IMG/VR virus record: IMGVR_UViG_3300038465_000091
Span: 62,001 to 126,000 of that record
Length of the DNA: 64,000 nucleotides
Reading direction: 5' to 3' (one strand)
In this document: piece by piece, positions 1,526 to 61,467 of the stretch
Layout of the letters: every line of letters begins with the position of its first letter
How positions within the stretch are numbered: position 1 is the first letter of the stretch
Made by a program: the position numbers and the translations under genes
The notes under the pieces: model-generated
What the model saw: the letters and a program-made list of their open reading frames with translations, nothing else
The model's database searches: none
What the model was told of the DNA's origin: nothing

Positions 1526-1537
1526 GATGAAAATACA

Positions 1538-27500: not shown

Positions 27501-27849
27501 CTATTCTGCGGTTGAAACCTCGGGCTCCGTGCTGTATGCTATTGATAGTTCGGGCGTCGTACTCGCCCCGCTTCCAGATGGTGTCACCCTCACATCGGCT
27601 GCCGCTGGCGATGCAGTGTCCGTAGGGACCGAGTATGGTGGATTGTTCTCGGCTACGGGAGCCAACCTCACGATTGGCGGCCTTCTCTATGCGGGGCTGG
27701 GCGGCGTCGTTACCCAGAGCTACCAAGACCTCATCAACGGCCCTGCTGTTGGTCCAGTGGGCTGGATCATCTGCGTTGGTAGAGCAATCTCCGCGACCGA
27801 GTTCATCTACGAACCGCACCTTCCGACCCGTTACGCGGCGTTCTTCTAA
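24508..27849 (+). CDS. Virion structural protein with CBM5/12-like carbohydrate-binding module and C1q-like segment
   Basis: WVAGTTYEAGDVIVYNSAFYTALAANTGLEP...W; VQFDETDFD...FTIQSAGDY. Confidence 0.65.
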   Translation: MSAPSGSLFPILTPGAIIRHTPAGDPTVEQYYHKSMEDGRLLEASVGDANNQLLELKMRITKDINTWLSMNQLAVDGQLGHTPRVPKYIADSIKLLQTVSKYQKELSGVITAVQQNIALLLTMKNSLTSMVQSSLNALANLLNNICNWNLPKIPSIPNLIADGHFNWNGFTFSPLQAFAKSIGNLPKFNFNFSFSQCNLLSLGYNPTTQPSSLTQMNGNVINPSALFIPPLGGTIATESETPAQMQAITSFPVYAAFNPNSSMLGAVPDPHTIISDYQMPSATYQSNIVSIVPALRGDTVEPTDLDYANPNLVVRQANLRKDLVHYITLEQVVASNYDPYITSAWLFYLQICRNGRGGNWLASFQAVYNQYIVPSLTALANNPIPWNNVLGSLGDFYMGVWVAGTTYEAGDVIVYNSAFYTALAANTGLEPDTNPITWQTPPPTGIVYQNTPTDIPLVDTLVAAGAGTQAQLNILWRLSYVEASLLGYTRTALWDGGGDSNYLSSFTGTDLDYQPTTIGTNMTSEILGSGTAAYPVSVIIPTSIKAIFDEVVAQATLSIANDTTYQSSYPRFKYVYDQFATATLVDRFTQFWRTFNYNLLLLLAQDPYLVSFVASYEGALDSAIDPLGSPTDYNIISADAASRNRSWTPGTPLLNIPIAPIVAYANSTPPSGPTSGWSSATQFDANTFLLRPDVQALPVPTQLAMLRTNISYAGLSLFVQQAVAEVDNQIANAQSIISSSQQLGFAVAALGDTTVVPQGAAGVAVQFDETDFDLTGNVTSPTTFTIQSAGDYAGYGQVVWDATEMGNYTITVTQNGTPIYTISSDPSASPANPLTLPFSFTGSFAVGDIVQVVASQNTSSPQNVLPTSYFSMILTGATSAPSVALIATDIANSFVTDNPIAALTVVRVQPDGSVAPVDPSIPLVTAVTTDVTGAFVAVTVATPAYGNPYNFTVGQVNPVVFSGLHVATFLNGQAGTIFATPTTTTFVVQLFTPTSHVSYSAVETSGSVLYAIDSSGVVLAPLPDGVTLTSAAAGDAVSVGTEYGGLFSATGANLTIGGLLYAGLGGVVTQSYQDLINGPAVGPVGWIICVGRAISATEFIYEPHLPTRYAAFF

Positions 27850-30750: not shown

Positions 30751-31224
30751 ATGGGTACGGTTTCAAAGGACCTGAAAGGGCTACAATTTGGGCTTTTGAT
30801 TGTTCAACGTGAGGGTGAGCCTCAAGGGAAACACCACCTACCCGTATGGATATGTCGCTGCATCTGCGGGGTAGAAAAGCCTTTTCGCTACGACACTCTC
30901 CAAGACGGCAGGGCAAAAAGTTGTGGCTGCGCTACCCAAAGGTTTAGAAAAACAAAGCTCGAAAAACGCCACAGCCTCGTAAACCAGCGATTCGGACGGC
31001 TGTTCGTTCTTTGGCGGGTGGGGTCGGTGAAATATGGTAAAACGCCTTCTTCCCATTCTTTGTGGGAATGTAAATGCGATTGCGGAAAAATTGTCAAGGT
31101 CGCAGGCCGTTACCTGCGTGCGGGCACCAAGAAAAGTTGTGGTTGTTTGAAGAGAGACATGATTTATTTGATGCGTGAATTATCTAAACACGGATACTTG
31201 CAGTCGGCGATGGGGGCTCACTAA
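30751..31224 (+). CDS. Homing-endonuclease-associated protein with two DLxGxxFG...CxCxCG...SCGC repeats (no nuclease domain)
   Basis: KDLKGLQFGLL...WICRCICG...KSCGC and LVNQRFGRL...WECKCDCG...KSCGC. Confidence 0.75.
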   Translation: MGTVSKDLKGLQFGLLIVQREGEPQGKHHLPVWICRCICGVEKPFRYDTLQDGRAKSCGCATQRFRKTKLEKRHSLVNQRFGRLFVLWRVGSVKYGKTPSSHSLWECKCDCGKIVKVAGRYLRAGTKKSCGCLKRDMIYLMRELSKHGYLQSAMGAH

Positions 31225-34200
31225 TGTCTTCTACTTACGATTGGCAGAAAACGTATCCTACGGTTTGCAGTCGCACGTTAGACCCGACCGGGAAAAACCT
31301 GACGACTATCGTTGGTATGCACGACCGTCAAATCACCGACGCCGATATCAACCTCATTCAGGACCTTCAGGATTACAAACGCCAGCGACTCCTCAACGAT
31401 CAGGTCACCTCGGGGTGCTTGACCTACGTCCCCTTCCAGTTTGCGCCTTTGGTTTCGAACACGTTTTACGTTCCCGCCTTTGACATCCTTTTCAACGGTG
31501 AGGTAATCTCAATTCAAGGCAATAACTCATCCGCCTTGACGCTCAACGCGGTGACGCTACCCACACCCCCAGCTTGGTCTTCGGGCACGGCGGAAGAAGA
31601 CGCCAGATTGTACATCGCATTTGTCGAAGTTTGGTATCAGTCGTTGAACCCGCAGACGGGGCAAGGCTACTATATCGATCCTATTACGGGGTTGCGATTC
31701 TTTTACCCGTATGGCGGCGTCAATCCAGTCTCAACGAACGCCGAAATAGTTCCCGATGATTCAGTTGACCCCTTCCAAGGATTGTTCACCACCGAACGCG
31801 CCCAGATTCAGTGGCGTATCAATGTCCAGCGTGTGGGGCTCAACTACGACTTCACACAGTTTCAGTATGGTCTCGACCCATCGACGGCAACCAACCCCTA
31901 TGCTCGCATGGCGGTGTACGCGCAGGCGCTCCAGTCCGCCCCCAATACATCCTCTTCTATTTATCAATTCACGAACATGGGTCCGATCAACGGCGATACG
32001 GCGGTGTGGCGTGCTGGTGATGGTAACGTTTTCAATTCACTCGGTACCATGGATGGTTACAGTTACGCTTTCCCGCTCGCGATCATCTTTCAGAAAAACT
32101 CGGGCAACTTCGACATCGCCAACAATTTGTGGGGTTCCGCTAACTCTAATCCGCCCGCATACTGGCTAGCTTTGCCGTTTGCCCAGCAGGGTGTCAATGG
32201 TCTACTTTCGTCAGGCATCTCGGGCCGTTTCGATTCTCGTCTCGCCGATCAGATTTTCCAAGACAACGTGGTGGATACTCGTTCGACGATTAACCTCGCT
32301 GGTTGGGACATGGACGCTCTATGCCGCTACGGGTTTGGCGATCTCGTACAGGGTGAAACCCAACTTGCGATCTCTCGTGGAGATGCGGCGGTTTCCCCCG
32401 CCAACGCGGAAAATTGCGGCTCACGACTGAATTACTATGTTTCCATGGCTCCAGCGGGTATCATCAACACCAACACTATCGGTGCGTGGGATGGATTTTC
32501 AAATGGATTCAGTAGTGATCTTCGCACCTTCACATCGACCATTGCGGTTTCGACCAGCGGTAAATCTCTCGGCAACATCGGTCAGCCGTGGATTAGTGGA
32601 CCACCTCAAGGCGATGCATTCACGATTACCCTACCCGTCAACTCAACGGCAACCATCCAATCCGTTGCGGTGACCGCGCTGGTGACCAACCAATTGACGG
32701 GCGCTAATACGCCCGCCGCCTTGCTGAAGGGGCAGGTGACGATCAACGGTCTGGGCTCCAAGTCGGCGACCGTGCAGTTGACCGATGCGTTGGGCGGCAC
32801 CGCGTTTGATCCGGGTACAAACAATATTTACGCAACAGTTGGGGTCCAGTACCCCGCAGGATCGAACATCGATCTCCATCACGTCCCTTATGTGGTGGAC
32901 GGCGGTCAGTTGTTTGACAACTCTACAGGCATTACGATGCCCGTATATGGCGTTTCTGAATATCAAGTACAGTCGCCGCAACTTGCGTTGCAAGCACAGG
33001 CGGTTTGGGCAGTCAACCCCGAATACTCGGACACAGTGTTTGGCACTCGAATTTGGGTGCAAATTCCGGGCTCTTCGGGACAATCACAAACATTGGGCAC
33101 CCAGACGTATACAACATTCGTTATTTCTCGCATCGACCTCAATGAGTCAGTGAATGGCTTGTACGGCGTCAGTGCGTGGGATTCACAGGTAGGTCCGAGC
33201 GTACTTTACCCCATTTCAAATCGCGTGATGAACGGAAACAACTTTGTTCTGACGATCCAACAGGCGGTTCCCGCGTCATCCACGTTGGTCGTTGAATTCG
33301 TAGCACAAAATACCGCTCAGTTGGCCTACAACGCTCCCGTAAAGGGCGTCACTGAGATTGAGGAAACGGTTCTGTTTGGTAATTATACCGGACCTTTCTT
33401 TACGACCGACCAACGTGTGCAGGCGGTTTCGACGGTGTACAACGGCGCGATTGCAAACACCACCACGGTTATCTTGGCGGCTCAGCAGCCCAACATCAGC
33501 ACCCTATCGACTGGGTGCAGCATCAAAGGTATCTCGGGCGACGATACGGGGAATAGATTCATCTGGGTTTCCGATGGGGCTACGCCTACGTCAAACTTTA
33601 CCGCCATAACCATACCAGCAACCAGCATCACCATTAACAACGGTGTCGTTACCTTGGTTGTTCCGGGTAATCTATCGTCAAAGCAGTTTTTCTTCGTGGG
33701 ATCAATTCTTCCAGCATTTGATCCGCTCTCAAAGTTGATCGTTGAGATGCACTACATTCCGTATCAGGGCGAGGGCGTATTGAATCGTGATTATGAATTC
33801 TTACACGCCGAAGACAACGCTCTCATCACCACCAACGGCACTGGTTCCGCCCCCATTGTTGGATTGAAGGACATCTATCCTTACAATCGTGAACTACCGA
33901 TTGCAATCACTATGCCCGCTCAGCCCGGTTGGAGCGATGCTACGCTTGCCAATGCCCCGCTTGAAACGTTCTTTGATTCAAACTTCGTCGCCATGCGAGT
34001 AAACAACGTAGAGCACACGTTCTTGGCCCCACTACATACCAATGATTTCATCCCTCCGATCAATAGGGATATTCGTAAATCTGTGCGCTTCGTGGCTGCG
34101 GCCACAGGCGGCAGGGGCTTCGCGACGGCTGTGCCACATCTAGGCTTCGCTATTGCCCCGCCAACTGCCCGCACGGTATTAGGTGCGAACCTACAAACCA

Positions 34201-35132
34201 CCACTGCACCCATCACGTTGTACGTTAACAACGTCACTGGTCTCGACAGTAATAGCGGACTGTCGCTGGCTACGGCGAAGCTGACAATCCTATCCGCAAT
34301 GAATGAACTACCGCCCGTTCTTAGCTTCCCATGCGTCATCGAGCTTGCGGATACGGTAGTAGCCTACAACCTCACCAGTATCCAAAGCAGCGGTGGGCTG
34401 GAGGAAATTACGCTAGGAGATGGTGTGAGTGAAAGTCTCTTCGCGTTCGCTTTGGCTAACTTGTCCCGTGTAATACAGGGCGAGGGTCGTTTGGTCATCT
34501 CGATTCAATCAGGGTCGAGTAATCAGGCGGTCATCGACGCTACGGGGTTTGCGGGCACGGGCACTGGTCCGACGTATGCGTTCTACACCGATACAAGCCG
34601 CGTGATCTTTAACGGCATCATGTTCAAAGGGTTCCAAGACGCCGCGATCAAGGGTAGAAACGCCGACATTCAATTTGTGAATTGCAGTTGGACGGATAAT
34701 CTTCAAGCAGGTTCTTACGAAGAGGCGTGCGGCGTTGTCATCGACGGAGGCAGTATCACGCTGCCGAGTTCAGGTGTGGGGCACATCGGAACAGGCGGTA
34801 CAAGCATCAGTGCTACGAGTGTCAACATGCTTTTGGAGACGAGCCCCGCCGCTTTGAACACGGCTCCGTTCTTTGTAGTTGAGCGCGGATCGAACCTGAC
34901 ACTCATGACGCACGGTGTCAGCGGCTTGCAGGAAAATCTCCCGCAAGTATCTCCGTTCATTATCGTGGCTCAAGCGGAATTGAATAGTAGCGTTGTAGTT
35001 ACGGCAGATTTTCAAACTTGGGGAAGTTGCGTGCTTGAAGCAAATTCAGTCTTGGCTCAGACCGTTCAAACAAATTCGTTTCTCGGCGGCGTGATAGCGG
35101 ACGTTACGTCAAGTACGGTGACACAATTATAA
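31224..35132 (+). CDS. Large baseplate wedge/tail fibre protein with C-terminal beta-helix
   Basis: 1302 aa; DADINLIQD N-terminus; LYVNNVTGLDSNSGLS...TI pectin-lyase-like entry motif. Confidence 0.65.
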   Translation: MSSTYDWQKTYPTVCSRTLDPTGKNLTTIVGMHDRQITDADINLIQDLQDYKRQRLLNDQVTSGCLTYVPFQFAPLVSNTFYVPAFDILFNGEVISIQGNNSSALTLNAVTLPTPPAWSSGTAEEDARLYIAFVEVWYQSLNPQTGQGYYIDPITGLRFFYPYGGVNPVSTNAEIVPDDSVDPFQGLFTTERAQIQWRINVQRVGLNYDFTQFQYGLDPSTATNPYARMAVYAQALQSAPNTSSSIYQFTNMGPINGDTAVWRAGDGNVFNSLGTMDGYSYAFPLAIIFQKNSGNFDIANNLWGSANSNPPAYWLALPFAQQGVNGLLSSGISGRFDSRLADQIFQDNVVDTRSTINLAGWDMDALCRYGFGDLVQGETQLAISRGDAAVSPANAENCGSRLNYYVSMAPAGIINTNTIGAWDGFSNGFSSDLRTFTSTIAVSTSGKSLGNIGQPWISGPPQGDAFTITLPVNSTATIQSVAVTALVTNQLTGANTPAALLKGQVTINGLGSKSATVQLTDALGGTAFDPGTNNIYATVGVQYPAGSNIDLHHVPYVVDGGQLFDNSTGITMPVYGVSEYQVQSPQLALQAQAVWAVNPEYSDTVFGTRIWVQIPGSSGQSQTLGTQTYTTFVISRIDLNESVNGLYGVSAWDSQVGPSVLYPISNRVMNGNNFVLTIQQAVPASSTLVVEFVAQNTAQLAYNAPVKGVTEIEETVLFGNYTGPFFTTDQRVQAVSTVYNGAIANTTTVILAAQQPNISTLSTGCSIKGISGDDTGNRFIWVSDGATPTSNFTAITIPATSITINNGVVTLVVPGNLSSKQFFFVGSILPAFDPLSKLIVEMHYIPYQGEGVLNRDYEFLHAEDNALITTNGTGSAPIVGLKDIYPYNRELPIAITMPAQPGWSDATLANAPLETFFDSNFVAMRVNNVEHTFLAPLHTNDFIPPINRDIRKSVRFVAAATGGRGFATAVPHLGFAIAPPTARTVLGANLQTTTAPITLYVNNVTGLDSNSGLSLATAKLTILSAMNELPPVLSFPCVIELADTVVAYNLTSIQSSGGLEEITLGDGVSESLFAFALANLSRVIQGEGRLVISIQSGSSNQAVIDATGFAGTGTGPTYAFYTDTSRVIFNGIMFKGFQDAAIKGRNADIQFVNCSWTDNLQAGSYEEACGVVIDGGSITLPSSGVGHIGTGGTSISATSVNMLLETSPAALNTAPFFVVERGSNLTLMTHGVSGLQENLPQVSPFIIVAQAELNSSVVVTADFQTWGSCVLEANSVLAQTVQTNSFLGGVIADVTSSTVTQL

Positions 35133-35141: not shown

Positions 35142-38100
35142 ATGCCTAATCCTCCAAATCTCGGTTACGTGGGTCCAGTATCGGCGCTCATTGACAACAA
35201 CAATGTCTTGACCGTTAGCTGGGTGCCGCCGACAGGTCCCGCTTACACAAATTGGGAAATCATCCTCAATGGGAACCCCACCGCGTCCATACCTGCTCCA
35301 TCCCCGTACACGGGAACGCCGCTGTTTTACACGACGACGTTGACCGCAGGCTCGTGGACGATGGACATGCTCACCAACATTGCGGGCAGTCCACCCCAGT
35401 CATTTGACTGGGAAGCGTATAACTCGACTCTTAACGTATGGCAGTCAGTTGCTCCTCCAACGGGATCGTATCTTGCCTTCCCCGACGCCATCCCTTCGGC
35501 GGATGTTGTATTCAGCAGCCTTACCCTCGAACTCGGGCAGCCCTTGACTCTTACGCTTCAGTCCGCGTACACGGGTGCCGATCAATGGCAGGTCCTCTGG
35601 CCTGATGGCTCGAACACGGGGTGGTTGCCACTCTCCGCATCTCTCCTGACTAAGCAGTTCTCGATCTCGGGTCCGTTGGACGTTGTAATTCAGTCCCGCA
35701 GACTTTACAACACTTCGTCAAACAGTCCAGCCGTCATTCTGATGCGGCAACTTACGGTTCAAATATTCGTTGTCGATCAGCAGTACACGGGGACGACCAC
35801 GACATCATCTTCCTTGACAGGCACGCTAGGTATCGGCGGTCAACAGGGATTTGAGATCACAGGCGCAACGGGCGTAGGCTCGGTCGCCAATCCATGGGAA
35901 GTGGCTGCTCGTGCGATTGTACGTGACACGGTTACTAACGAACTCAAGCTGCTCGTTGCGACGACTCGCTTCTCCAATGCTTCCTCCCTGCTGGGTACGA
36001 TGGGTATCGACGTATTCCCCATTGAAGGACGCCCAAAGATCAAGGAACTGATCCAGCCCGTTTACGAAAACAGCTTTAACTCACTTACATCTTCGGTCCC
36101 AGTAAACATCACGACAACGCAATTGCCGACAAGCATCTACGTCGGTAAGCCGATGGCCGAATTCCAAATGCAGGCATCGGGCGGCACTACGCCGTATGCT
36201 TGGTACACGGACGGCTTGCCTGATGGCTTGAAACTGAGCATTAACGGCGTACTGAGTGGAACCCCCTTGGCCTTAGGCACTGCCTCTATCAACTTTGCGG
36301 TGCAAGATTCCAGCGTGCCTTTCTATATTGCGGAAGCAGCATTCCCCATCACGATAAGTACCGATTTATTGGTGGAGCTTGCATTGGGTCAAACCGATGC
36401 TAACGGTAACCCGCTATCTCAGTTGGGCAATTCGCTTGGTATAGCGAAGATCGATGCGCCCTATTCCGTGCAGATGATAGTTGGAAACGTCAACCCAGCC
36501 AACCCAATTCCGGGTGGATTGCCGCCGTATACGTGGAGTATCCCCGCAGGTAGCCTACCTATCGGACTCAGCATCAATCCAAACACGGGACTGATCTCGG
36601 GCACTCCGAGCACATACAACTCGACCTCGGACTTTGGCAAGACATTCTCAGCGGTCATTCAGGTAACGGACGCTATCGGTGCCATCGCCACACAAACGTA
36701 TCAGATAACGTTGGAACCAGCCGTGCTCCAGTTCGGCAATCTCTCCCAACCAACTATTTACGCGGATCAGCAATTCAAACTGACGATTCCAATCTTTGGT
36801 GGGTTTTCGCCGTATTCGATCACGGCGGCAGGCTCAGGGTTCTTTCCAGCGGGGGGAACAAGCGCATACTACGGTCCAGTAACCCTCGTGGACGGGCAAA
36901 TTCAGGTCGATGTCAACTATCCAATTGCGGGCTCGTACTCGTTCATTGTTATCGCTCAGGACAGTCCGTCCCCCATTGGGTATGTGCCTGTAACACTTGC
37001 TCAGCAGGTTACGCGCCAATTCACCGTCGTTGTCGAGGCCGCTCTTAGCGATCCATTTCTCGTCCCAGCTTTCGTGGGCCATGTGTGGGGCTACGCAGAC
37101 ACGCAAGTGAACGGCGGCTATAAAGCAACGCCGATTGCCATAACCGGAGACTTCGCAGGTTTCACGCTCGGTGGAGTATTTGTCAGCCTGAATTCCGCCG
37201 CGCCAGCTTTCGGGGGCAACACCCTGTATACGGGCACACTCGGATTTTGTAGTGGGGGCGGAAACAATGCTTATTTGGGCAAGACTTTCGTTGTCTCGGG
37301 ATTCCAAAACCCGACGAACAACGGCACATTCCTGTGCACTGCGTCCGACACGACACACCTGACGTTGAACAATCCTAATGGCGTAGCGGAAACGATACCA
37401 GCCCTTGGCTACAGTTCATTTCTTACCACAGCTATCCCTACGCCCCTTCCAGCGGGCTCTACTGGCACGCCAGCTAGCCCCGTTGCCCCGTTTGCTTTAA
37501 CGACCTTGTATACGGGAACGGTTTTAGGCGGGGCGAATAACGCCCTTGTTGGACAAGATTTCATTGTCTCGGGATTCGCTCCTCTCTCGGGAAACAACGG
37601 TACATTCTACTGCGTAGGGTCCACCGCAGCCACCTTGACGCTGAGTAACCCAAACGGGACGAACGTGACCGTCCCTAGCACTGCGTACTCGTTAATCTCA
37701 GCAATCAGCGGGTCCGGAGCGGGGTCCCTCGTCACCGTTGAATTAGGTTCGGCGGCTAATTACGCCCTGCTCGCCTACAGTGGGATCACGAACGCTGATC
37801 CAGCGACCTCGATTTCGGGAGGTGTTATTGGCTCAGCCCCAATCATGAGCATCACGGGCTTTAATCCCCCTACGGCGACCGTAGACAACGCTGACGCTCC
37901 TGCGGCCCGTCTCGACGGTAACGCCGCGTTTGGTTATTATAGTGGCCTGACCCCAACTCAATCGAGTCTAAACAACTTGAGCACGAACAATGGCGGGGGC
38001 GGCGTAGGGGTTTATCGCGCTGGCATCTTCTCAGGCGGTGCTTTGGACATGCCTACCAGTATCACCCTTGATGCTCAGGGCAATGCGAACGCGGTCTTTG

Positions 38101-41100
38101 TGTTCATTTCCGCGTCTACGACTCAACTTCAAAGCGGTGCATCCATCCTCTTGCTCAACGGCGCACAGGCTGCGAATGTTGTCTGGGTGGTCGGAAGCTC
38201 CTTCACGCAGTTCGGCACGGCTGGCACAATGGTTGGTACTATTCTCGCTTACGCGAGTATCACCCTTGGTGGTGGGACATTAAACGGCAGGGCGCTAGCC
38301 GTAGGCGGCGGCAATGGGGCCGTGACCATCGCGGCTGCCGAAGCCATTACGGTATCGGCGGGCGCGGGTTCGCCATCAACCACAATTTACACCGCCGATT
38401 TGGGCACGTTCTCACCGTCCCTATCGGGCAACTTTACAGTTAGCGGGTTTGACTACACGGGAAACAACGGCACCTTCGCTATCGTGTCTAACACATCCAG
38501 CCAATTGATTCTGGCTAATCCAAATGGCTCGCCAACCCTTGACTCTATCGGCAGCCCGCCAATAGCCATCGGCACCGCCACTCAAGTAGCAATTGCGGTA
38601 CAGTCGGCGGCAAAGGCGTTGCAAGCAACAGCTTTGTCAAACGGCATCACGGTTGCTATCGACCCAGTAATCCCAGAGGTAGAATTTAGTGGTCCTCCGT
38701 CTGGAGTTTATGGCAACGTACAATACATGGTGCCTCTCCTGCTTCAATTGGCAGGTACCACCGTTGCTACGACCTCGCAAGTGTACACAGTACTAACGCA
38801 CGATGACGCGACACTCCTCGGTTGGGTGACGGGTACAGACATTGGAACGATAAGCACGGTCACACGCCCCTACGTTGTCGGGGAAGTGGTTGGTTTGAAC
38901 CCGCGTCAACCGTACTACAACTCGCCAGATGTTCCTCAGATTACCCCAACGAGCCCCGTACCGAGTGACGCTCCATGGATCGCCACGATGCCCATCACAG
39001 TGTCGGGCAATGCCCTACCATTGGGTCTTTCGCTCGATGCAAATACGGGGTTGATCTACGGGACACTCACGGGCGTGGCTACAGGTCCCAGTGTTATCCA
39101 ATACGTAGGTGCGATGGGCATAATCCACGGCACGGTGACCATCACTTGGAACACTGTAGTGAGTGCTTTCTCTCCGATTGATAACCTTCAGGATAGCGTG
39201 CCGCTTGGTACGATACTGAACAGGACAAGCAACACCAGCTATATAGCCGTACCTGCGGGAGTCACACCAGCATCGGCATCCATATACTACATAAGAGGCG
39301 CTGCTCAAGGGGCACTCCCAGCGGGCTTAACCCTTGACTCCACCCCAACGGGTCAGAATTTCTATATCACAGGCGCAGCCACAGAGAGTGGGTATTTTGA
39401 CGTTTGGTTTCAGGTGACCGCAAACACGGGCACCGCGTACTTGTACCATCGTATATCCATCGATTTTACCGCCCCGTTGACGATTGTAACTACATCACTG
39501 CCCAGTATTAGTCAACAGGCTTACTCCGCGCAAACACAGGGGTTTGGCGGCGTGCCTCCTTACACGTGGTCAGCGGTTTTCCCAGCAGGCGCGGCGGGGC
39601 TCAGTATCTCGCCATCCACGGGTATAATTTCAGGCACGCTGTCGTCTTTCCCTGTAATTAGCCCCACCGACTTCGACAACGTTGCAATTACTTTAACAGA
39701 CTTCCGAGGCTCCACCACTACAGCGCAGCTTGACCTCACGTACAATAACAGTTTGCGGCTTACGACGAACCGCATAGCGACCATTACCGACGATCTTAAC
39801 GGGTATTCGTTTCAAATGACGGCTGCGGGCGGCATAGCGCCGTACACTACATGGGCTGAGATTGGCACGCTGCCAACAGGCATCACGTTTAATGGCAGCA
39901 CGGGTTTGTTTTCGGGGGTTTATTCTGGTGCCACGGGATTAAGTTTTCCCATCACCATTGCAGTGACGGATAGTACACCCCTGACGACTGCACCCATACC
40001 ATTTACCATAACTACTGGCGGCTTGTCTGGAAGTATTAACGACAGCGGAGTAGGGCCTATCCCGCGTGGCGAAGCTTATCAAGGCACGCTTTCAACGGCG
40101 TGTATGACAACTCCTGTACAGTGGCAAGTTGCGCCTACCACCGGATATCCAAATCTTCTTCCTTCGGGGCTGTCATTACAAGTCAACGGCACGGGAGCAA
40201 CAGCAACGATTGCTGGCATTTATTCAGGTCCTATAATTCTGCCTACAAGTCCGTATCCAGTCAGGGTTATTGCGGTAGATAGTCTAGGCGATACGGCAGA
40301 GGCTATCGTAGAGTTCAGTACCGATACAAACCTGACCATCATCGGATGGGACTATGCGTTGTCCCCTATCGGCGTGCAGCCATTTCCGCTTCCCAACGCT
40401 GTTATTACTGGCAGCTATCCGCCGCCAAGCGGCGGTGGGATTCAGCTTGTAGCAATTCACGGCGTACCCTCGGGCGTACTGGCGAACGGATACAATCAGT
40501 ACGTTTGGAACACCATACCTTCAGGTCAGTTCCCATTCAATGGGATTTCGCTCTCCTCGACTGGCGTGCTCTCGGGCGCAGCTACGACGCTGTTTAGTCA
40601 GAGTTTTGACTTTGTGGTGTCGGATAGTCTCACACCGCCTAACACCGCCCCCCCAGTCACCACTACGTTTGCTTCGCAGACTTCGGCACTCGTTATCACC
40701 ACGTCATCGTTACCACAAGCAACCGCTGGCGTAGTGTACAACGGAACAGGGTTCCAACTGCAACAAACGGGAGCGGTGGGTTCCTTCACATTTTCCGTTG
40801 TCGGCGGCACCCTACCTTCAGGGCTTTCGTTGTCACCTACAGGTTTGATTACGGGCACTACGCTTCAGGTAGGAAGCACCCCCATCACGTTCCGTGTGAC
40901 GGACAGCACGTCGGCCTACTTCAACAGAACCTTGACGTTTACGGTTATTTCTGGGTTGGCGCTGAAGACGGGTATCGATTACGAGGATTCAACTGCGTAT
41001 GGCTACATCGGATATGTTGATACGGGCAACGTGGTTGGTATTGCACCGCGCACAAACCTGTCATTCTATGTGGTTGCAACGGGCGTAATTACCACCGATC

Positions 41101-41354
41101 CTGCCGCGCTCGGAATAATTGTCAGTGGCGGGTTTGGTGTCGGGACCGTGACCATTTCGGGCGGCGTGGCAAAAATTCCACTGACCGGGGCATTTTCATC
41201 GGGCACCATCGGAAATGTCAACCCCATATCCATTTCTGTCACCGATTCTGGCATAACTGCTACAGCAACTTTTAATTGGGTGGTTTATAACGACGGAGTG
41301 TTGCGACTGGTCGCTAACAACGCATTCCCAGTCAAGTTAACGACGCCGAACTAA
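35142..41354 (+). CDS. 2070-aa virion adhesin with multiple putative Ig (He_PIG) repeats and a DUF3494 ice-binding-like domain
   Basis: Repeated GG(T/V)xPYxW...LPxGLS(I/L)xxxTGxISGTP; internal LGSAANYALLA...TLDAQGNANAVFVF...NGAQAANVVWVVGSS...GTILA...LNGRALA. Confidence 0.85.
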   Translation: MPNPPNLGYVGPVSALIDNNNVLTVSWVPPTGPAYTNWEIILNGNPTASIPAPSPYTGTPLFYTTTLTAGSWTMDMLTNIAGSPPQSFDWEAYNSTLNVWQSVAPPTGSYLAFPDAIPSADVVFSSLTLELGQPLTLTLQSAYTGADQWQVLWPDGSNTGWLPLSASLLTKQFSISGPLDVVIQSRRLYNTSSNSPAVILMRQLTVQIFVVDQQYTGTTTTSSSLTGTLGIGGQQGFEITGATGVGSVANPWEVAARAIVRDTVTNELKLLVATTRFSNASSLLGTMGIDVFPIEGRPKIKELIQPVYENSFNSLTSSVPVNITTTQLPTSIYVGKPMAEFQMQASGGTTPYAWYTDGLPDGLKLSINGVLSGTPLALGTASINFAVQDSSVPFYIAEAAFPITISTDLLVELALGQTDANGNPLSQLGNSLGIAKIDAPYSVQMIVGNVNPANPIPGGLPPYTWSIPAGSLPIGLSINPNTGLISGTPSTYNSTSDFGKTFSAVIQVTDAIGAIATQTYQITLEPAVLQFGNLSQPTIYADQQFKLTIPIFGGFSPYSITAAGSGFFPAGGTSAYYGPVTLVDGQIQVDVNYPIAGSYSFIVIAQDSPSPIGYVPVTLAQQVTRQFTVVVEAALSDPFLVPAFVGHVWGYADTQVNGGYKATPIAITGDFAGFTLGGVFVSLNSAAPAFGGNTLYTGTLGFCSGGGNNAYLGKTFVVSGFQNPTNNGTFLCTASDTTHLTLNNPNGVAETIPALGYSSFLTTAIPTPLPAGSTGTPASPVAPFALTTLYTGTVLGGANNALVGQDFIVSGFAPLSGNNGTFYCVGSTAATLTLSNPNGTNVTVPSTAYSLISAISGSGAGSLVTVELGSAANYALLAYSGITNADPATSISGGVIGSAPIMSITGFNPPTATVDNADAPAARLDGNAAFGYYSGLTPTQSSLNNLSTNNGGGGVGVYRAGIFSGGALDMPTSITLDAQGNANAVFVFISASTTQLQSGASILLLNGAQAANVVWVVGSSFTQFGTAGTMVGTILAYASITLGGGTLNGRALAVGGGNGAVTIAAAEAITVSAGAGSPSTTIYTADLGTFSPSLSGNFTVSGFDYTGNNGTFAIVSNTSSQLILANPNGSPTLDSIGSPPIAIGTATQVAIAVQSAAKALQATALSNGITVAIDPVIPEVEFSGPPSGVYGNVQYMVPLLLQLAGTTVATTSQVYTVLTHDDATLLGWVTGTDIGTISTVTRPYVVGEVVGLNPRQPYYNSPDVPQITPTSPVPSDAPWIATMPITVSGNALPLGLSLDANTGLIYGTLTGVATGPSVIQYVGAMGIIHGTVTITWNTVVSAFSPIDNLQDSVPLGTILNRTSNTSYIAVPAGVTPASASIYYIRGAAQGALPAGLTLDSTPTGQNFYITGAATESGYFDVWFQVTANTGTAYLYHRISIDFTAPLTIVTTSLPSISQQAYSAQTQGFGGVPPYTWSAVFPAGAAGLSISPSTGIISGTLSSFPVISPTDFDNVAITLTDFRGSTTTAQLDLTYNNSLRLTTNRIATITDDLNGYSFQMTAAGGIAPYTTWAEIGTLPTGITFNGSTGLFSGVYSGATGLSFPITIAVTDSTPLTTAPIPFTITTGGLSGSINDSGVGPIPRGEAYQGTLSTACMTTPVQWQVAPTTGYPNLLPSGLSLQVNGTGATATIAGIYSGPIILPTSPYPVRVIAVDSLGDTAEAIVEFSTDTNLTIIGWDYALSPIGVQPFPLPNAVITGSYPPPSGGGIQLVAIHGVPSGVLANGYNQYVWNTIPSGQFPFNGISLSSTGVLSGAATTLFSQSFDFVVSDSLTPPNTAPPVTTTFASQTSALVITTSSLPQATAGVVYNGTGFQLQQTGAVGSFTFSVVGGTLPSGLSLSPTGLITGTTLQVGSTPITFRVTDSTSAYFNRTLTFTVISGLALKTGIDYEDSTAYGYIGYVDTGNVVGIAPRTNLSFYVVATGVITTDPAALGIIVSGGFGVGTVTISGGVAKIPLTGAFSSGTIGNVNPISISVTDSGITATATFNWVVYNDGVLRLVANNAFPVKLTTPN

Positions 41355-43666: not shown

Positions 43667-44974
43667 ATGGCGACCACGAATCCGTATAAGTACGCCTACC
43701 CGGGTCCACCGTTCAATTGGCTCGGGCATGTCTCCGAAACTCAGTTCAAAGCCTTTCAAAGTTGGTACACAGCTTTGAATATCAGTGCGCCCGCGTCTTC
43801 CGCCGCCACGTCTCCCGGAAGCACGAGCACAAATCCCGCCGCCCCGCCGGGCGCGGGAACCACCACTCCCATAACCCCACAGTCGAATTCGTCAACCACC
43901 AATGCAGCGGCTCTGGCTGCGACCATCGTCAAGAATTTCGAAGGATTCAGTGCAACAGCATATCCCGATCCTGCGGGACAGACGAAAACGTATTCCATTG
44001 GGTATGGGCATCAGATTGTTCCGGGTGATGGGCTTTCTACGTCATCGGTAGTGACGATGGATCAAGCGAATACGCTTTTGATGTCCGACCTGTCGGCGTC
44101 GATCAATACCGTCAACAATTCCGTAATGTCGCCGACACCCTTGGAGCCCACTCAGACGGCGGCTTTAGTCTCGCTGGCGTACAACATCGGCGGCACTGCT
44201 TTTAAGAATTCTACACTGGTTTCTGATCTCAACAGCGGCAATACGGCTGCGGCAGCGGCTCAATTTAACAACTGGGTGTACGCTGGCGGGACTGTAAATT
44301 CGTCGTTGGTTGCTCGGCGTACACAGGAGCAAGCACTTTTCAGCACGGGCGTCATCCTAAGCAACTCGGGCAACCCGACCGTCAACGCCGCCAATGCCGC
44401 CAACAGCGGTGGGTCGATGACCACCCAGCTTCATTACCAGATTCGTGCTCAGCAGTTACGGAAGACCGCAGGAGCTTTGGAACAGTACTACCAAACGGTG
44501 AATGAAATCTCGCTAGGCGTGCTGACTCCATCGTTTGCAAAAGCCGCATGGCAACCACCTACGGGCGGGTACTTCCAGTACGCTCATCGGGACGATCACC
44601 TACCGATGGTTGCAATGGGGCAGGTCAAGACCTACCTGAAGGATCGGCTCCAACGTCAGGATGAAGCGGTTTTTCACATGAATCATGCTCGCAATATCAT
44701 TGAAAAGATTGAAGATAAGGCACAATATCAAGCGGATGCTAAGACCCAAATCCCCAACTTAATCGCTCAAATCAACGGCTATTTTGCTCTCCCGCAGTAT
44801 GCTCCCGTGCTGGTTAAAGATCAAACTGATGTATACCCAACGGATAGCACAACACCCAGATATCGAGTTCACGAACTCGATAATCCGACCATTTTCGAAC
44901 TCGAACAACACGGTCGTGCTCTCCCGGGAGGTCCAGTTGATCTGAAGGAAACACCACAACCCGCTACTGGCTAG
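43667..44974 (+). CDS. Baseplate-associated protein with inserted GH24 phage-lysozyme domain
   Basis: FEGFSATAYPDPAG...SIGYGH...ALVSLAYNIG...LVARRTQE. Confidence 0.85.
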   Translation: MATTNPYKYAYPGPPFNWLGHVSETQFKAFQSWYTALNISAPASSAATSPGSTSTNPAAPPGAGTTTPITPQSNSSTTNAAALAATIVKNFEGFSATAYPDPAGQTKTYSIGYGHQIVPGDGLSTSSVVTMDQANTLLMSDLSASINTVNNSVMSPTPLEPTQTAALVSLAYNIGGTAFKNSTLVSDLNSGNTAAAAAQFNNWVYAGGTVNSSLVARRTQEQALFSTGVILSNSGNPTVNAANAANSGGSMTTQLHYQIRAQQLRKTAGALEQYYQTVNEISLGVLTPSFAKAAWQPPTGGYFQYAHRDDHLPMVAMGQVKTYLKDRLQRQDEAVFHMNHARNIIEKIEDKAQYQADAKTQIPNLIAQINGYFALPQYAPVLVKDQTDVYPTDSTTPRYRVHELDNPTIFELEQHGRALPGGPVDLKETPQPATG

Positions 44975-45154: not shown

Positions 45155-45948
45155 TGTCATTCGACTACAACGTTTTGGTAATCGATCCAACCACACAGCA
45201 ACCCATTGGCGCGTGCGATCACCAACAGAGTTTTGAAAGATACGTTTGCGACTTTAATGATTTTAAGACGTTGCACTACGCCGGGAATACCGCGTTGAAT
45301 ATGCGGGCTCCAATCAACGGCACGGATATGGTTCGGATGTGGATTTCCGAGGAAGAGGTCCGGCAAAATGATCCTACGTATGGGTGGACAATCGTGCGTG
45401 ACCCAGCCCGACTGGATGCCGTTAACGCAACCGATCAGTTTTACAAGGTCATGTTTGTGAAGCCTGTCCGCCTCGTGGTGCCGTTGATCGAGGTGTCGTA
45501 CTTAACCTCACAGGGGTACTGCCTGAAGTGTAGTGCCATAGGCTTTCTAAACGATTTTAAGAATGCGTCCTCAGGAAGTTTCGTACGAGTCACCCAGCAG
45601 GTAAAACTGGCCCAAAAGGGGTTGAAATGGGTTTTGACATCTCAGTGCGCTTTCTACCCGACATTTGTTTGTCCTCTTAAGAGTTATGTTGGCAAGAAAT
45701 TGGGTATTCAACTAACAGACACCGACATTCAGAATGCCGTACAAACCGCTCTGAGCACAATGCAGCGAGTGCAACAGGCTCAAAATACGGTCCAAGTGCT
45801 CGACCCGTTGGAAATGATTAAAGATATCCAGTACGTAACGGCGCAGGTCGCCGCTGATGATCCGACAACCATACAGGTCGGGGCTATGATTACGACATTC
45901 AGCGGCACGTCAGTTCCTCTGTCGTTTCAGATGATGGTGAATAACTAA
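45154..45948 (+). CDS. Baseplate wedge protein (gp25-like C-terminus)
   Basis: Directly upstream of baseplate J; C-terminal DPLEMIKDI...DDPTTIQV. Confidence 0.55.
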   Translation: MSFDYNVLVIDPTTQQPIGACDHQQSFERYVCDFNDFKTLHYAGNTALNMRAPINGTDMVRMWISEEEVRQNDPTYGWTIVRDPARLDAVNATDQFYKVMFVKPVRLVVPLIEVSYLTSQGYCLKCSAIGFLNDFKNASSGSFVRVTQQVKLAQKGLKWVLTSQCAFYPTFVCPLKSYVGKKLGIQLTDTDIQNAVQTALSTMQRVQQAQNTVQVLDPLEMIKDIQYVTAQVAADDPTTIQVGAMITTFSGTSVPLSFQMMVNN

Positions 45949-48900
45949 TGCCGACTCCCGTGACATCGCTTACCGCGCTTCAGTTGGTGACGCCGATATT
46001 ACCGAATAATGTCCAGACGATCTCCGTAGATTCATCCGTACTTCCCGTCGTGATCGTCGCTGACGCGAATACAACTCGCATCGAGGTGTCGATCTACAAC
46101 ACAACTTACGTGGCGACAACGTTCACTACCGCAACAGTCAATGGGGTGACTCAAAACACATTTTCTATCAGCGTTCCCTTGATTCCTACGGTTCTGGAAG
46201 CCACAGTTCAAATCCTTGGGCGAAACTATAACCCCTTCGGTGCTTGGGCACCACTCACCACGTTCCCGACTGGCTACACTTTCGTTGATCCTAATGGAAA
46301 CGTGCAAGTCGCCACAGTCGGCGGCGTTTCGGGCAGTTATGGGTTGGTTGGCAGCCCACCCACCATCCCAGTGCAACCCCCGTGGAGTGCACAGAAGGGT
46401 GGAGTCACATTAGATGGCAGCGGTGCTACGATAATCACGTGGACGAATGTTGGCGTCCTCGCTGTTTCTCCGACCATCAAGTTTTCGCTGATCTTTTTCC
46501 AGAGCAACCTCGCCGTCCAGTTCGGCCCGCCATCGGGTATTCAGGCATTCAAGGATCAGACAGATTGCACCCTTCAGTGGGTCACTCCGTCGTTTACAAC
46601 CCCGAACATCAGCCTTGTCGGGGTGCGAGTCCTGCTTTCGACGGACCCCGCAGGCATCAATCCGCCGTTCGTTCAATTCGGCGATCTGGTGCAGGACATT
46701 TCAAGCTCCGTCAACACGGTGATTGATTCTGAAACGACTACATCCACGGTCGGCAACACGACCGTTACCACCACCTCTTCGACGACGATGCCGACGAACT
46801 ATAGTACAGTGGACGTACCCTCGTCGTTCTTTGGCGCTGCCCCAGAGTTTTACGCGATGTTCTCCACGGTCATTCAGGAGACCAACCCCAACTCAACCAC
46901 CATCTATGAATCTCAGCAGAACGGTCCTCTGACTTGCGGATTCGTGAACCTCAAAGTGGTCAGTCCAACTGATTTCCCAGTGCTCCAACGTCAACAGGAT
47001 ATCGCTGGGCGCATTATAAGTCAGATCATGCGGCAGCAACCGAATCTTGATCTTTCACCACGCTCGGAAATTCGCGATGTGGTCGTCGATCCGATTGCCG
47101 TGGAATTATCAAGCATGAGTGTCCGCGAGTGGTTTGCTCGTTGCTCCGCATCTATCTCGGCTATCAGTCAAGTTGATAACGCGAGTGGCAACGGGATATC
47201 CGATCCTTTCAATAGCAGCCCCTACAAACCCCAGATAGCCCGCGCATACGGCCTTAACGCCTCCAACACTCAAAGTTTAATCGACACTCAGTTCAACATT
47301 CTCGGCGAACAGGCGGGACTGACCCGAGGTGGGACAACTTCGGCCACTACAATTTTGACGTTCTTCACGTACACGCAGCCCACGCAAAGCATTACAATTC
47401 CCGAGAACGCTACGGTCGCGACCATCGCCGACGCCAACACCCCAGCCTTGAATTTCATCACCCGAGGTTCGGCGGTGCTCGATGTAAACAACCTGAACTC
47501 TTACTACAACGCGGTACAAGGCTGGTGGGCGGTCACCGTACCTGCGGAATGCACGGTCGCGGGCTCCGTAGGAAACGTCGGTGCGGGTACGATCCGTTCC
47601 GTCGTGAATGGGTTGCCATCGGGTATCAACGTTACAAACCTTGTGGCGGCTCAGTATGGCTCCGACCAGCAATCCAACTCTCAGTTTGCGGCTTTAATTC
47701 AAGCACGTCTCGTCACGGGCGTGGATACGGGCACGCGGCACGGCTACCGTGTAACTGCCTTGCAGACTCCGGGCATCATATCGGCTGTAATCGTGGCGGC
47801 TGGTGACATAGATATGCTTCGAGATTGGGACCCAATTCGTCAGAAGCACGTCTTCGGTTGCGTGGATATTTACACTCGCGGTACGACACTTACCCAGCAG
47901 GACGAAAGCGTTACGTTTACATACGGAACCACAGGAACTTACGGCAACTTGCTAACGTATCTACCTCTCGTACTATCCGATTCGCAGTTGATCCGTTTCA
48001 ACATTCCGACATTCAACACGTTGACCTCCCCAATATACACGGCTGTGGAACTCGTCGTGACTCGCGGGTCGAGCAATTTCTACCTCGGCATTGAACGCGC
48101 CCAAATCGATAATGTGGGCGGTAATATTTTCATCAATCCGAACGACCCATGCTATCAGTACGTTGGATCGGGAGCTACTACGGCCAAGATTCCGTTGCTT
48201 ATTAACGGCAACCCAGCTACCAACCAAACAGCGGTTGCCGCCCTCGCTAGTGCTTCGGGTTCCTACACTTTTGGATTGTTTGCACGTCTTCAATCATCGT
48301 TGCTTCATACCCCAATTCTTCAACCCGTCATCGATGTAGATTCGGTTACAGGCGAAACGGGGGAAACGGGGTCTGTTAGCAGTCCCCTGATCGAACTCAT
48401 TCACACCTCGGATTTTCTATTGTACGGCGGCTCCAACAAGGCGGGTGATGAGGTTAACGTATCGACAACCACGAGTGCCCCCGTCACCAAGACAATCACG
48501 GCGAGCACCGCCACTCCCGCCATTATCGATATTGCAATGGATGTGCCGCTCAGCGCGACTGGTGTGCCACAAGACATCATATCGGTGTTGAGTACGGACC
48601 TTTCAACCAAATACATTTGGGGTGTCGATTACACCGTCGTCGCATTGGATACCTACCACACTTATGGGCTGAATCTGCTGACCTCCACGGTTCCGATCAC
48701 CAACATCGAGATTTCAGGCGATGTACTGACGGTCACAGGTCCCAATAACTTTGGTGCGGGGGCAGTTGTCGCTCTTAGCCAACTCGGAGTCGCCCAATTC
48801 TTAAGCGGACAGAACGTCACCGTCGCCACGGCCTCACCTTCGCAGTTTACGGCAACCTATTCTCACGCTGATTATGCATCGGCCACAGATTCAGGGCTCG

Positions 48901-52918: not shown

Positions 52919-52922
52919 ACCC

Positions 52923-61069: not shown

Positions 61070-61120
61070 GAAGTTAAATATTCCTAGCCAAAATCCTCAG
61101 ACTTCTGGTATCATGTAATA

Positions 61121-61390
61121 GATGGTCGTAAGCCCCGCAAGGGGTAAAAGGCACTGGTACTGATTTTCAGACAGGGGTTCGACTCCCCTCAGGTCCACCA
61201 TAAATTTTTGCACCACCTTATGGGCCTGCCCCGGTTTCGATGGAGACGGTATGGGATGGCAGCCAGCGACCCGAGCGCAAGGGTGTACCCTCGTTAAACA
61301 GGCATTCAAAAAAGTAAACGCTGAAGCTCCAAAGGCTTTCGCTGCTCATGCTTAATGAGCCAGACCCCGTGGGTCTGTTCCTCAACACGG
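61121..61390 (+). ncRNA. ssrA: Circularly permuted two-piece tmRNA; tag (A)AEAPKAFAAHA
   Basis: Acceptor piece ends ...GACAGGGGTTCGACTCCCCTCAGGTCCACCA (61200). A 21-nt spacer follows, then the coding piece starts GGGCCTG (61222), which pairs with CAGGTCC (G3:U70). Tag ORF at 61320-61355 follows GTAAAC. Outer boundaries are approximate. Confidence 0.9.
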
Positions 61391-61396
61391 CAAGAA

Positions 61397-61422
61397 CGCC
61401 CGCGCAAGCGGGCATTTTTGTT
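61397..61422 (+). terminator. Intrinsic terminator after tmRNA
   Basis: GCCCGC-GCAA-GCGGGC-ATTTTTG. Confidence 0.8.
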
Positions 61423-61467
61423 TCTGGTTGACAATCTGAATTCCAAAGGCTAGTATAGGGGCACATT

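What the first reader, a model, noticed from the sequence alone, without database searches (positions are those of the whole stretch)
37730..38360. DUF3494 ice-binding-like domain embedded in a giant Ig-repeat virion protein
Seen: within the 2070-aa ORF, an apparently complete DUF3494-type sequence (LGSAANYALLAYSGITN...ITLDAQGNANAVFVF...LLNGAQAANVVWVVGSS...GTILAYASITL...LNGRALA). It is flanked by three copies of an F-x-VSGF...NNGTF module and by He_PIG repeats. Established: DUF3494 beta-solenoids are the commonest microbial ice-binding proteins, often displayed on Ig-repeat stalks. Inference: the virion may bind ice or another ordered surface, or be protected during freeze-thaw, which suggests a cold soil, peat or permafrost habitat.
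Basis: partly seen in the sequence, partly recalled or inferred. Interest (0 to 1): 0.7.

Follow-up and report, generated by a model that had tools for sequence, protein, structure and literature searches.

The report
Ice-binding-type domains on phage fibres
A giant phage from peat and permafrost carries a complete ice-binding-type (DUF3494) domain in a huge fibre-like protein, plus five more copies on four other proteins. This use of the domain appears unreported for phages, and whether it binds ice is still untested.

Summary
The 2070-aa ORF (35142-41354, +) holds a full-length PF11999 domain (aa 877-1065, window 37770-38336; 91.5 bits against a cut-off of 28.7). It models confidently (pLDDT 94) as the ice-binding-protein beta-solenoid and matches only solved ice-binding proteins.

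The domain sits between small FxVSGF..NNGTF beta modules with floppy linkers, inside a stalk of nine He_PIG Ig repeats. The gene lies in a conserved baseplate gene block of a jumbo phage (223.5-kb record, about 71% complete).

New findings:
- The genome carries six DUF3494 domains on five proteins, and one of these proteins has tail-fibre motifs.
- These domains and 42 from IMG/VR contigs form a virus-only clade. It has no match in GenBank phages, PHROGs or phage entries of BFVD.
- The domain is an exchangeable cassette. Positional orthologs keep it, swap its allele (41% identity against 66-80% in the flanks) or lack it. A complete 332-kb relative has none.
- The face homologous to the mapped ice-binding site is the most conserved surface (22/27 outward residues A/G/S/T). 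dN/dS is 0.07-0.12.

Ice binding remains untested. The family also occurs in ice-free habitats.

The parts
35142..41354 (+). Giant fibre-like ORF, 2070 aa (P0001)
   Evidence: Positional orthologs of 1566-2098 aa sit in the same gene block in 8 related phage loci.
35142..36131 (+). N-terminal region, aa 1-330. It is the most conserved part (95% identity to L149, 47-57% to distant orthologs) and is the likely virion-attachment end.
   Evidence: No Pfam or PHROG match. The attachment role is inferred from the usual tail-fibre pattern.
36126..36713 (+). Two He_PIG Ig-like repeats (aa 329-405 and 435-524)
37188..37451 (+). FxVSGF..NNGTF module 1 (aa 683-770), a small four-strand beta domain
   Evidence: pLDDT 72-91. 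No Pfam family.
37467..37715 (+). FxVSGF..NNGTF module 2 (aa 776-858)
37770..38336 (+). DUF3494 / PF11999 beta-solenoid (aa 877-1065), an exchangeable cassette
   Evidence: Kept, swapped or absent in orthologs.
38196..38216 (+). b-face rung beta4, SSFTQFG (aa 1019-1025). S1019 and T1022 align with AnpIBP S153 and T156, whose Tyr mutants lose ice binding.
   Evidence: alignment to 7bwx and PMC7277481. These positions are near-invariant in the viral clade. The other rungs are aa 880-885, 902-905, 966-971, 992-997, 1038-1043 and 1059-1064.
38355..38591 (+). FxVSGF..NNGTF module 3 (aa 1072-1150)
   Evidence: Lower model confidence.
38901..40946 (+). Array of seven He_PIG Ig-like repeats (aa 1254-1935)
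40947..41354 (+). C-terminal region (aa 1936-2070) with no family match. It is a possible distal tip.
   Evidence: no match. The role is inferred.
31224..35132 (+). Upstream 1302-aa structural-block ORF, syntenic in all ortholog loci
   Evidence: 49-87% identity
41373..43658 (+). Downstream 761-aa ORF, syntenic and variable (32-68% identity)
43667..44974 (+). Phage_lysozyme-domain protein, 435 aa
45948..50219 (+). 1423-aa protein with a Baseplate_J-like domain (baseplate wedge)

Best explanation
Shown:
- The stretch encodes a complete, well-folded DUF3494 (IBP-1) beta-solenoid.
- It lies in a central slot of a 2070-aa Ig-repeat protein, bounded by flexible linkers. The gene sits in the conserved baseplate/tail gene block of a jumbo phage from peat and permafrost. 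A complete 332-kb relative has a tail-sheath match, so the lineage is probably contractile-tailed.
- It is one of six paralogous domains on five proteins of this genome.
- It belongs to a virus-only clade.
- It behaves as a cassette that is kept, swapped or absent between positional orthologs.
- It is under purifying selection.

Inferred mechanism: the domain is an accessory adhesion module displayed many times over on virion fibres. It works through its flat, conserved Thr/Ser/Ala/Gly b-face, which binds an invariant, repetitive ligand rather than a host-specific receptor. I take ice, or the ordered water layer on ice, as the leading candidate. Multivalent display would stick virions to ice grain surfaces, or locally inhibit recrystallisation. 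Either effect would keep virions intact and hold them in the unfrozen water films where hosts persist during freeze-thaw.
For: Family and fold.

Phage and structural context:
- Ribonucleotide reductase, DnaB helicase, lysozyme, Baseplate_J, homing endonucleases and tRNAs.
- The block is conserved in 8 loci.
- The complete 332-kb relative has a Phage_sheath_1C match.
- The 479-aa paralog matches tail-fibre PHROGs at E 6e-9 to 1e-7 and carries tail-fibre motifs.

Six domains on five ORFs, 41-79% identical to each other.

Virus-only bipartition of 48 domains, SH-aLRT 97. Cellular genomes reach 44% identity or less.

Cassette behaviour.

Constant-ligand signal:
- dN/dS is 0.071 in the 1066-aa paralog against its L014 ortholog. 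There the domain is 91% identical while the C-terminal parts are 54% and 25% identical.
- b-face outward positions have mean entropy 0.95 bits, against 1.28 for other positions.
- 22 of 27 outward residues are A/G/S/T. AnpIBP S153 and T156 correspond to S1019 and T1022 (PMC7277481).

Habitat: permafrost and peat runs.

In peat RNA libraries: short contigs 100% identical to the gene, including inside the domain.

Every PF11999 structure matched in the PDB searches is deposited as an ice-binding or antifreeze protein.
Against: - No assay has been done, and ice binding cannot be read from sequence.
- The same b-face conservation is seen in cellular soil homologs. PF11999 occurs in caves, sediments and hot springs, possibly binding other surfaces (PMC11645318, PMC12337378).
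- One viral-clade member comes from a run labelled only 'soil metagenome'.
- A complete relative has no copy, so the domain is dispensable.
- Allele swapping (41% against 66-80% in the flanks) resembles receptor-binding-protein mosaicism.
- Virion location of P0001 is inferred. No PHROG tail-fibre family matches it.
- The b-face mapping rests on a pairwise alignment at about 33% identity.
- RNA-library contigs could be DNA carry-over.
Confidence: 0.4

Rival explanations
1. The domain is a generic adhesin for a surface other than ice. It would tether virions to peat polysaccharides, biofilm matrix, humic or mineral surfaces. This is analogous to Ig-like capsid domains that hold phages in mucus (own knowledge). 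The cold habitat would then be incidental.
For: Reviews state that DUF3494 occurs in many ice-free habitats and may bind other substrates (PMC11645318, PMC12337378). The closest cellular homologs are ordinary soil bacteria, including Streptomyces, Bradyrhizobium and Danish soil genome bins. A clade member comes from a 'soil metagenome' run. The conserved b-face fits any invariant ligand.
Against: No non-ice ligand has ever been demonstrated for PF11999. The window's phage is found only in peat and permafrost runs. The b-face has the small-residue, hydroxyl-ladder composition of proven ice-binding sites.
Confidence: 0.3
2. The domain is a host-recognition module. It would be a receptor-binding or primary-adsorption domain for a host surface polysaccharide, with the paralogs and swapped alleles widening or shifting host range.
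For: The domain sits on fibre proteins, one of which has tail-fibre motifs. The six copies are 41-79% identical. Allele replacement occurs in orthologs (L153: 41% against 66-80% in the flanks; 837-aa paralog domain a: 52%, dN/dS 0.35). Beta-solenoids are common in phage receptor-binding proteins (own knowledge).
Against: The candidate binding face is the most conserved surface, not the most variable. In the pair of the 1066-aa paralog and L014, the domain is conserved (91%) while the C-terminal region diverges to 25%, so specificity probably lies in the C-terminal region. In P0001 the domain is central, not at the tip. Variable spots lie in loops at aa 937-960 and 1023-1031, which leaves some room for this reading.
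Confidence: 0.17
3. The domain is a purely structural element. It would act as a rigid spacer or assembly and stability domain of the fibre, with no external ligand.
For: It lies in the middle of the protein between linkers. Positional orthologs function without it.
Against: Six copies are maintained under purifying selection. A solvent-exposed face is more conserved than the core positions of the same face (0.95 against 1.13 bits). A spacer would not need that.
Confidence: 0.08
4. The protein is not part of the virion. It would be a phage-carried auxiliary gene whose product is released or displayed by the infected cell, for example to protect the host from freezing.
For: Ice-binding proteins are usually secreted. 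In another phage contig, a 374-aa clade member lies beside the terminase gene rather than among tail genes.
Against: P0001 sits inside a conserved block of abutting structural ORFs with lysozyme and baseplate genes. It has Ig-repeat fibre architecture. One paralog has tail-fibre motifs. No signal peptide is evident by eye; no predictor was run.
Confidence: 0.05

Closest known systems
Canonical DUF3494 ice-binding proteins: EfcIBP 6eio, AnpIBP 7bwx, IBPv 5uyt, FfIBP 4nu2, Cryosericum IBPs 9lhn
   Same: Same Pfam family and fold: E 3e-29 to 6eio with the six-domain profile, TM 0.7-0.86. The b-face Ser/Thr/Ala/Gly ladder is kept, including the equivalents of AnpIBP S153 and T156. The 837-aa paralog has two domains, as IBPv does.
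   Different: Only 29-34% identical to the closest of these structures. Those are small secreted proteins of cells, whereas this one is embedded in 479-2070-aa phage fibre-like proteins. It forms a separate virus-only clade. Activity is untested.
SfIBP_1 of Shewanella frigidimarina (6bg8), a DUF3494 with tandem Ig-like domains proposed as an ice adhesin, and the MpIBP RTX ice adhesin (PMC5550230, PMC5014055)
   Same: An ice-binding-type module held on a long Ig-repeat stalk. This is the closest analogy for how it might work: tethering a particle to ice.
   Different: The anchor would be a phage particle, not a cell envelope. The domain is central rather than terminal. The Ig repeats are of the He_PIG type. 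MpIBP has an unrelated fold.
DUF3494 proteins of Hyperionvirus sp., a giant eukaryotic-virus genome bin
   Same: These are the only viral proteins in BFVD with this fold (3 hits, TM 0.65-0.76).
   Different: A giant virus of eukaryotes, not a phage. Identity is 18-29%, and no fibre context is known.
Phage tail fibres and tailspikes with modular, exchangeable binding domains
   Same: Conserved N-terminus with variable distal parts, domain shuffling between fibre genes, a position in the baseplate block, and tail-fibre motifs in the 479-aa paralog.
   Different: The DUF3494 fold was found in none of 50,697 GenBank phage records (tblastn) and in none of 38,880 PHROG families. Classical tailspike beta-helices have a different fold (own knowledge).

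Membership tests
Pfam PF11999 (DUF3494 / Ice_binding) | Profile match above the curated gathering score, over the full length | tested here: met
   91.5 bits against 28.7, covering profile 2-204 of 208. All six genome copies score 85-117 bits.
Pfam PF11999 (DUF3494 / Ice_binding) | IBP-1 fold: a discontinuous triangular beta-solenoid braced by one long alpha-helix | tested here: met
   AF2 pLDDT 94.1 and pTM 0.90, with one long helix (aa 919-934) plus stacked strands. The top 31 PDB hits are all DUF3494 ice-binding proteins.
Functional ice-binding proteins | [quoted passage not shown] | tested here: inconclusive
   By alignment to 7bwx, 22 of 27 outward residues are A/G/S/T, and S153/T156 correspond to S1019/T1022 (PMC7277481). 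These positions are conserved in the viral clade. The same holds in soil homologs of unknown function, and no model coordinates were available to measure flatness.
Functional ice-binding proteins | Measured thermal hysteresis, ice-recrystallisation inhibition or ice shaping | not testable with these tools
   Needs recombinant protein.
Functional ice-binding proteins | Organism lives where ice forms | tested here: met
   Runs holding the gene are labelled permafrost metagenome and peat metagenome. A clade relative comes from an unspecified 'soil metagenome'.
Ice adhesins (SfIBP_1 type) | DUF3494 joined to tandem Ig-like stalk domains | tested here: met
   Nine He_PIG-type repeats flank the domain.
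Ice adhesins (SfIBP_1 type) | Anchored to a cell surface, with a signal peptide or membrane or outer-membrane anchor | tested here: not met
   The gene is encoded in a phage structural block. No anchor family was found. Any anchor would be the virion, so this works like an ice adhesin at most and is not a member.
Phage tail or side fibre | Gene lies in the tail/baseplate module, conserved in position | tested here: met
   The order 1302-aa ORF, giant ORF, 761-aa ORF, lysozyme, 277-aa ORF, Baseplate_J-like ORF is seen, as far as each locus extends, in all 8 ortholog loci.
Phage tail or side fibre | Sequence match to known tail-fibre families | tested here: inconclusive
   P0001 matches only phrog_38322 (unknown function). 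The 479-aa DUF3494 paralog matches four tail-fibre PHROGs.
Phage tail or side fibre | Presence in purified virions | not testable with these tools
   Uncultured phage.

The most novel reading that the evidence does not exclude
A lineage of soil, peat and permafrost phages has captured the DUF3494 ice-binding fold and spread it over several virion fibres (six domains on five proteins here). The particle itself would then bind ice, making this the first virion-displayed ice-binding system. Virions would survive freeze-thaw and stay concentrated at ice-grain boundaries, where hosts sit in unfrozen films.
Probability: 0.38. Interest if true: 0.85.

Novelty: new variant of a known kind. Interest (0 to 1): 0.7.

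Why it matters
How virus particles persist and keep finding hosts in seasonally or permanently frozen soils is poorly understood. These soils hold large carbon stocks whose turnover depends on microbes and their viruses.

A virion coated with many ice-binding-type modules would be a concrete, testable adaptation. Natural controls already exist: positional orthologs, and a complete related genome, that lack the domain.

If the ligand is not ice, the clade still has value. It offers a tractable system for finding what the many DUF3494 proteins of ice-free habitats bind. It would also add a new fold to the set of phage fibre adhesion modules.

The domains may also be of biotechnological interest as multivalent ice-binding scaffolds.

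Tried and rejected
- tblastn of the domain against 50,697 GenBank phage records found no match. No PHROG matched any of the six domains.
- Paper searches for DUF3494 or ice-binding together with phage or virus returned nothing relevant.
- A search for PDB codes 9LHN and related entries, and a search for IMG sample numbers, each returned nothing. Sample metadata beyond the run labels could therefore not be obtained.
- Terminase (PF17289, PF03237) and sheath (PF04984, PF17482) families were not found in the 71%-complete record. Only the complete relative gave a sheath match.
- The FxVSGF module has no Pfam family. The Atlas feature search gave only weak leads (E1_FCCH-like 0.90, Phage_tail_3 0.89), so the module's fold class is unresolved.
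- No donor or host was identified. The nearest cellular tips are at least 1.37 substitutions per site away and span many phyla.
- My first by-eye assignment of b-face rungs placed TSITLD (aa 972-977) on the b-face. The alignment to 7bwx showed that the beta2 rung is GALDMP (aa 966-971), so I corrected this.
- dS is saturated between P0001 and L149 in the domain, so there is no dN/dS value for that pair.
- Model coordinates are not exposed, so b-face flatness and Thr spacing were not measured.
- The peat RNA-library contigs show presence, not proven transcription.
- A wrong reading frame in one alignment call and a length error in one Atlas call were simple slips and were corrected.
Full report
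**1.

The + strand ORF 35142-41354 encodes 2070 aa. Pfam finds two families in it. He_PIG scores 97.9 bits in six stretches. PF11999 Ice_binding matches aa 877-1065, covering profile positions 2-204 of 208, at 91.5 bits against a gathering score of 28.7 (E 7.4e-26). The cut-out segment scores 97.3 bits.

The FxVSGF..NNGTF module is a real repeat of about 80 aa. It occurs at aa 683-770, 776-858 and 1072-1150. An iterated HMM finds nine He_PIG-type Ig repeats, two at aa 329-524 and seven at aa 1254-1935.

AlphaFold2 on aa 858-1085 with 105 homologs gives pLDDT 94.1 and pTM 0.90. The 31 best PDB matches are all DUF3494 ice-binding proteins (AnpIBP, EfcIBP, IBPv, FfIBP, the Cryosericum IBPs, TisAFP, LeIBP, ColAFP, SfIBP_1), with TM 0.67-0.86. 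The next hit has E 0.43.

A model of aa 683-1150 shows the solenoid at pLDDT above 94. The FxVSGF modules appear as small four-strand beta domains (pLDDT 66-91), joined by low-confidence Pro/Ser/Thr-rich linkers. The modules match no Pfam family. The Atlas gave only weak leads to small viral beta modules.

**2. Context: a jumbo phage, and a structural gene block**

The window is bases 62001-126000 of an IMG/VR virus record of 223,506 b that CheckV rates 71% complete. It encodes:
- a ribonucleotide reductase and a DnaB-like helicase;
- a Phage_lysozyme protein (43667-44974);
- a 1423-aa protein with a Baseplate_J domain (45948-50219);
- HNH and GIY-YIG homing endonucleases;
- a Mom-like protein;
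- a cluster of five tRNAs.

The giant ORF lies in a run of abutting large ORFs. The gene order is: 1302-aa ORF, giant ORF, 761-aa ORF, lysozyme, 277-aa ORF, Baseplate_J protein. This order is seen, as far as each locus extends, in all eight related loci examined. One of those loci is on a 332,300-b record rated 100% complete, and that record has a tail-sheath match. Virion location of the giant protein is therefore a reasonable inference, but it is not shown.

**3. It is one of six copies**

A whole-record search finds six PF11999 domains on five ORFs, of 2070, 1066, 1160, 479 and 837 aa. The 837-aa ORF carries two. The domains are 41-79% identical to each other.

The 479-aa protein matches four tail-fibre PHROGs at aa 322-393 and carries typical tail-fibre motifs. 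The 837-aa protein also starts with an FxVSGF module.

**4. A virus-only clade, unseen in reference phages**

Two peptide patterns alone retrieved 57 IMG/VR loci, at up to 85% identity. The best match in species-representative bacterial and archaeal genomes is about 44% identical. Those matches come from soil and peat genome bins and isolates across many phyla.

In a tree of 140 domains, the six copies plus 42 IMG/VR domains form one bipartition (SH-aLRT 97) with no cellular sequence inside. The six copies are scattered through that clade rather than clustered together. No donor or host can be named.

The fold is missing from the phage reference sets I could check:
- tblastn against 50,697 GenBank phage records gives no match.
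- No PHROG family matches any of the six domains.
- In BFVD the fold appears only in three proteins of a giant eukaryotic virus, Hyperionvirus.
- Papers on DUF3494 diversity do not mention phages or viruses.

In another, smaller phage contig, a 374-aa clade member sits beside the terminase gene. The module has therefore spread across phage types.

**5. The domain is an exchangeable cassette**

Positional orthologs of the giant protein were found through its N-terminus. They fall into four groups:

| Ortholog loci | Length | State of the DUF3494 slot |
|---|---|---|
| L149 | 2083 aa | Domain kept (71% identical; whole protein 72%) |
| L151-L153 | 2098 aa | Domain present but only 41% identical, while the flanks are 66-80% identical: an allele swap |
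| L150 | 2005 aa | Domain 57% identical; the region before it only 24% identical |
| L154-L159 | 1566-1927 aa | He_PIG repeats but no PF11999. L158 lacks the domain plus one FxVSGF module. L157/L159 lack aa 677-1160. The others have unrelated sequence or extra modules there |

Related records rated 58%, 54% and 33% complete hold 5, 2 and 2 domains. The complete 332-kb relative holds none.

**6. Which ligand?**

The domain is under purifying selection:
- In the pair of the 1066-aa paralog and L014, dN/dS is 0.071.
- In that pair the domain is the best-conserved part (91% identity), while the C-terminal parts are 54% and 25% identical.
- In the pair of the 837-aa paralog and L018, the second domain gives dN/dS 0.12. 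The first gives 0.35 at 52% identity, which looks like another swap.

The ice-binding site of AnpIBP (7bwx) has been mapped by mutagenesis and crystallography. [quoted passage not shown]

The HMMER alignment maps these rungs onto P0001:

| Rung | P0001 residues | Sequence |
|---|---|---|
| beta1 | 880-885 | SGITNA |
| loop | 902-905 | MSIT |
| beta2 | 966-971 | GALDMP |
| beta3 | 992-997 | STTQLQ |
| beta4 | 1019-1025 | SSFTQFG |
| beta5 | 1038-1043 | ASITLG |
| beta6 | 1059-1064 | GAVTIA |

Of the outward residues, 22 of 27 are A/G/S/T. AnpIBP S153 and T156 correspond to S1019 and T1022.

Across the 48 viral-clade domains, these outward positions have a mean entropy of 0.95 bits. Inward b-face positions have 1.13 bits and all other positions 1.28 bits. 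Variability concentrates in loops at aa 937-960 and 1023-1031.

A conserved exposed face argues for an invariant ligand. It argues against that face being a diversifying host-receptor site. The test does not single out ice, however. Cellular soil homologs show the same pattern. Published surveys also find the Ser/Thr b-face columns in sequences from rock and subsurface habitats (PMC12337378).

**7. Habitat and expression**

The gene is held at 0.88-0.99 of sampled words in runs labelled permafrost metagenome and peat metagenome, from several studies between 2018 and 2025.

Two peat metatranscriptome runs contain short contigs 100% identical to parts of the gene, including 37807-38139 inside the domain. 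DNA carry-over cannot be excluded.

A clade member from another record comes from runs labelled only soil metagenome.

**8. Verdict**

The feature is a genuine DUF3494 domain in a new setting. It is a mobile, multi-copy adhesion-type module on fibre-like structural proteins of uncultured soil, peat and permafrost phages.

My estimates are:
- about 0.4 that it binds ice or ice-ordered water on the virion;
- about 0.3 that it binds another invariant environmental surface;
- about 0.17 that it takes part in host recognition;
- the remainder for a purely structural role or a role outside the virion.

Membership of PF11999 is established. Membership of the functional class of ice-binding proteins is not. 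I rate it a new variant of a known kind, with interest 0.7.

Noticed in passing
G000 outside the window: genome 53038-56238(-), 175126-178608(+), 198515-199954(-), 200688-203201(-); loci L007-L010: Five further DUF3494 domains lie on four other large ORFs of the same phage record (1066, 1160, 479 and 837 aa). The 837-aa protein has two domains about 190 aa apart, and the 479-aa protein has tail-fibre motifs.
   Followed up: yes
window 235-1775 (-) and 61104-61446 (+): A cluster of five tRNA genes (Cys, Asp, Ala, Val, Ala). ARAGORN also calls a permuted tmRNA-like gene with tag AEAPKAFAAHA. The tmRNA call is unverified.
   Followed up: no
window 30751-31224 (+) and 52806-53618 (+): An HNH and a GIY-YIG homing endonuclease gene are inserted between large structural ORFs (phrog_374 at E 4.5e-28, phrog_314 at E 3e-27).
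   Followed up: no
window 56141-57013 (+): A Mom-like DNA modification protein (phrog_1384, E 6e-17), hinting at modified phage DNA.
   Followed up: no
window 24508-27849 (+): A 1113-aa structural-block ORF has a CBM_5_12 carbohydrate-binding-module match just under the cut-off (24.8 against 26.2 bits, aa 401-438). It is another possible adhesion module on the virion.
   Followed up: no
window 37744-38107 in DNA run X6: Logan contigs of a permafrost DNA run break repeatedly inside the DUF3494 region, with loose ends and a variant contig (14 differences in 148 bases). This fits assembly collapse between paralogous domain copies or co-occurring strains.
   Followed up: partly
L160:470-6610 (IMG sample 3300037230, 44-kb contig): A 374-aa viral-clade DUF3494 protein lies about 800 bases downstream of a Terminase_6N gene and before an 820-aa ORF. 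In this different, smaller phage the domain sits near head and packaging genes.
   Followed up: no
L064:7205-15055: A 2616-aa protein on a 162-kb IMG/VR contig has two DUF3494 domains that fall outside the main viral clade, nearest to cellular sequences. This is possibly an independent acquisition or a misclassified contig. L065 to L068 behave likewise.
   Followed up: partly
L154 and L155 orthologs (aa about 100-1270): Orthologs that lack DUF3494 carry up to five FxVSGF..NNGTF modules, including one near the N-terminus. The small module is itself a shuffled building block of these fibres.
   Followed up: partly
L060, L061: ORFs 100% identical at the nucleotide level to the 1160-aa paralog occur on separate IMG/VR contigs from other samples. 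The same phage therefore recurs across samples.
   Followed up: partly
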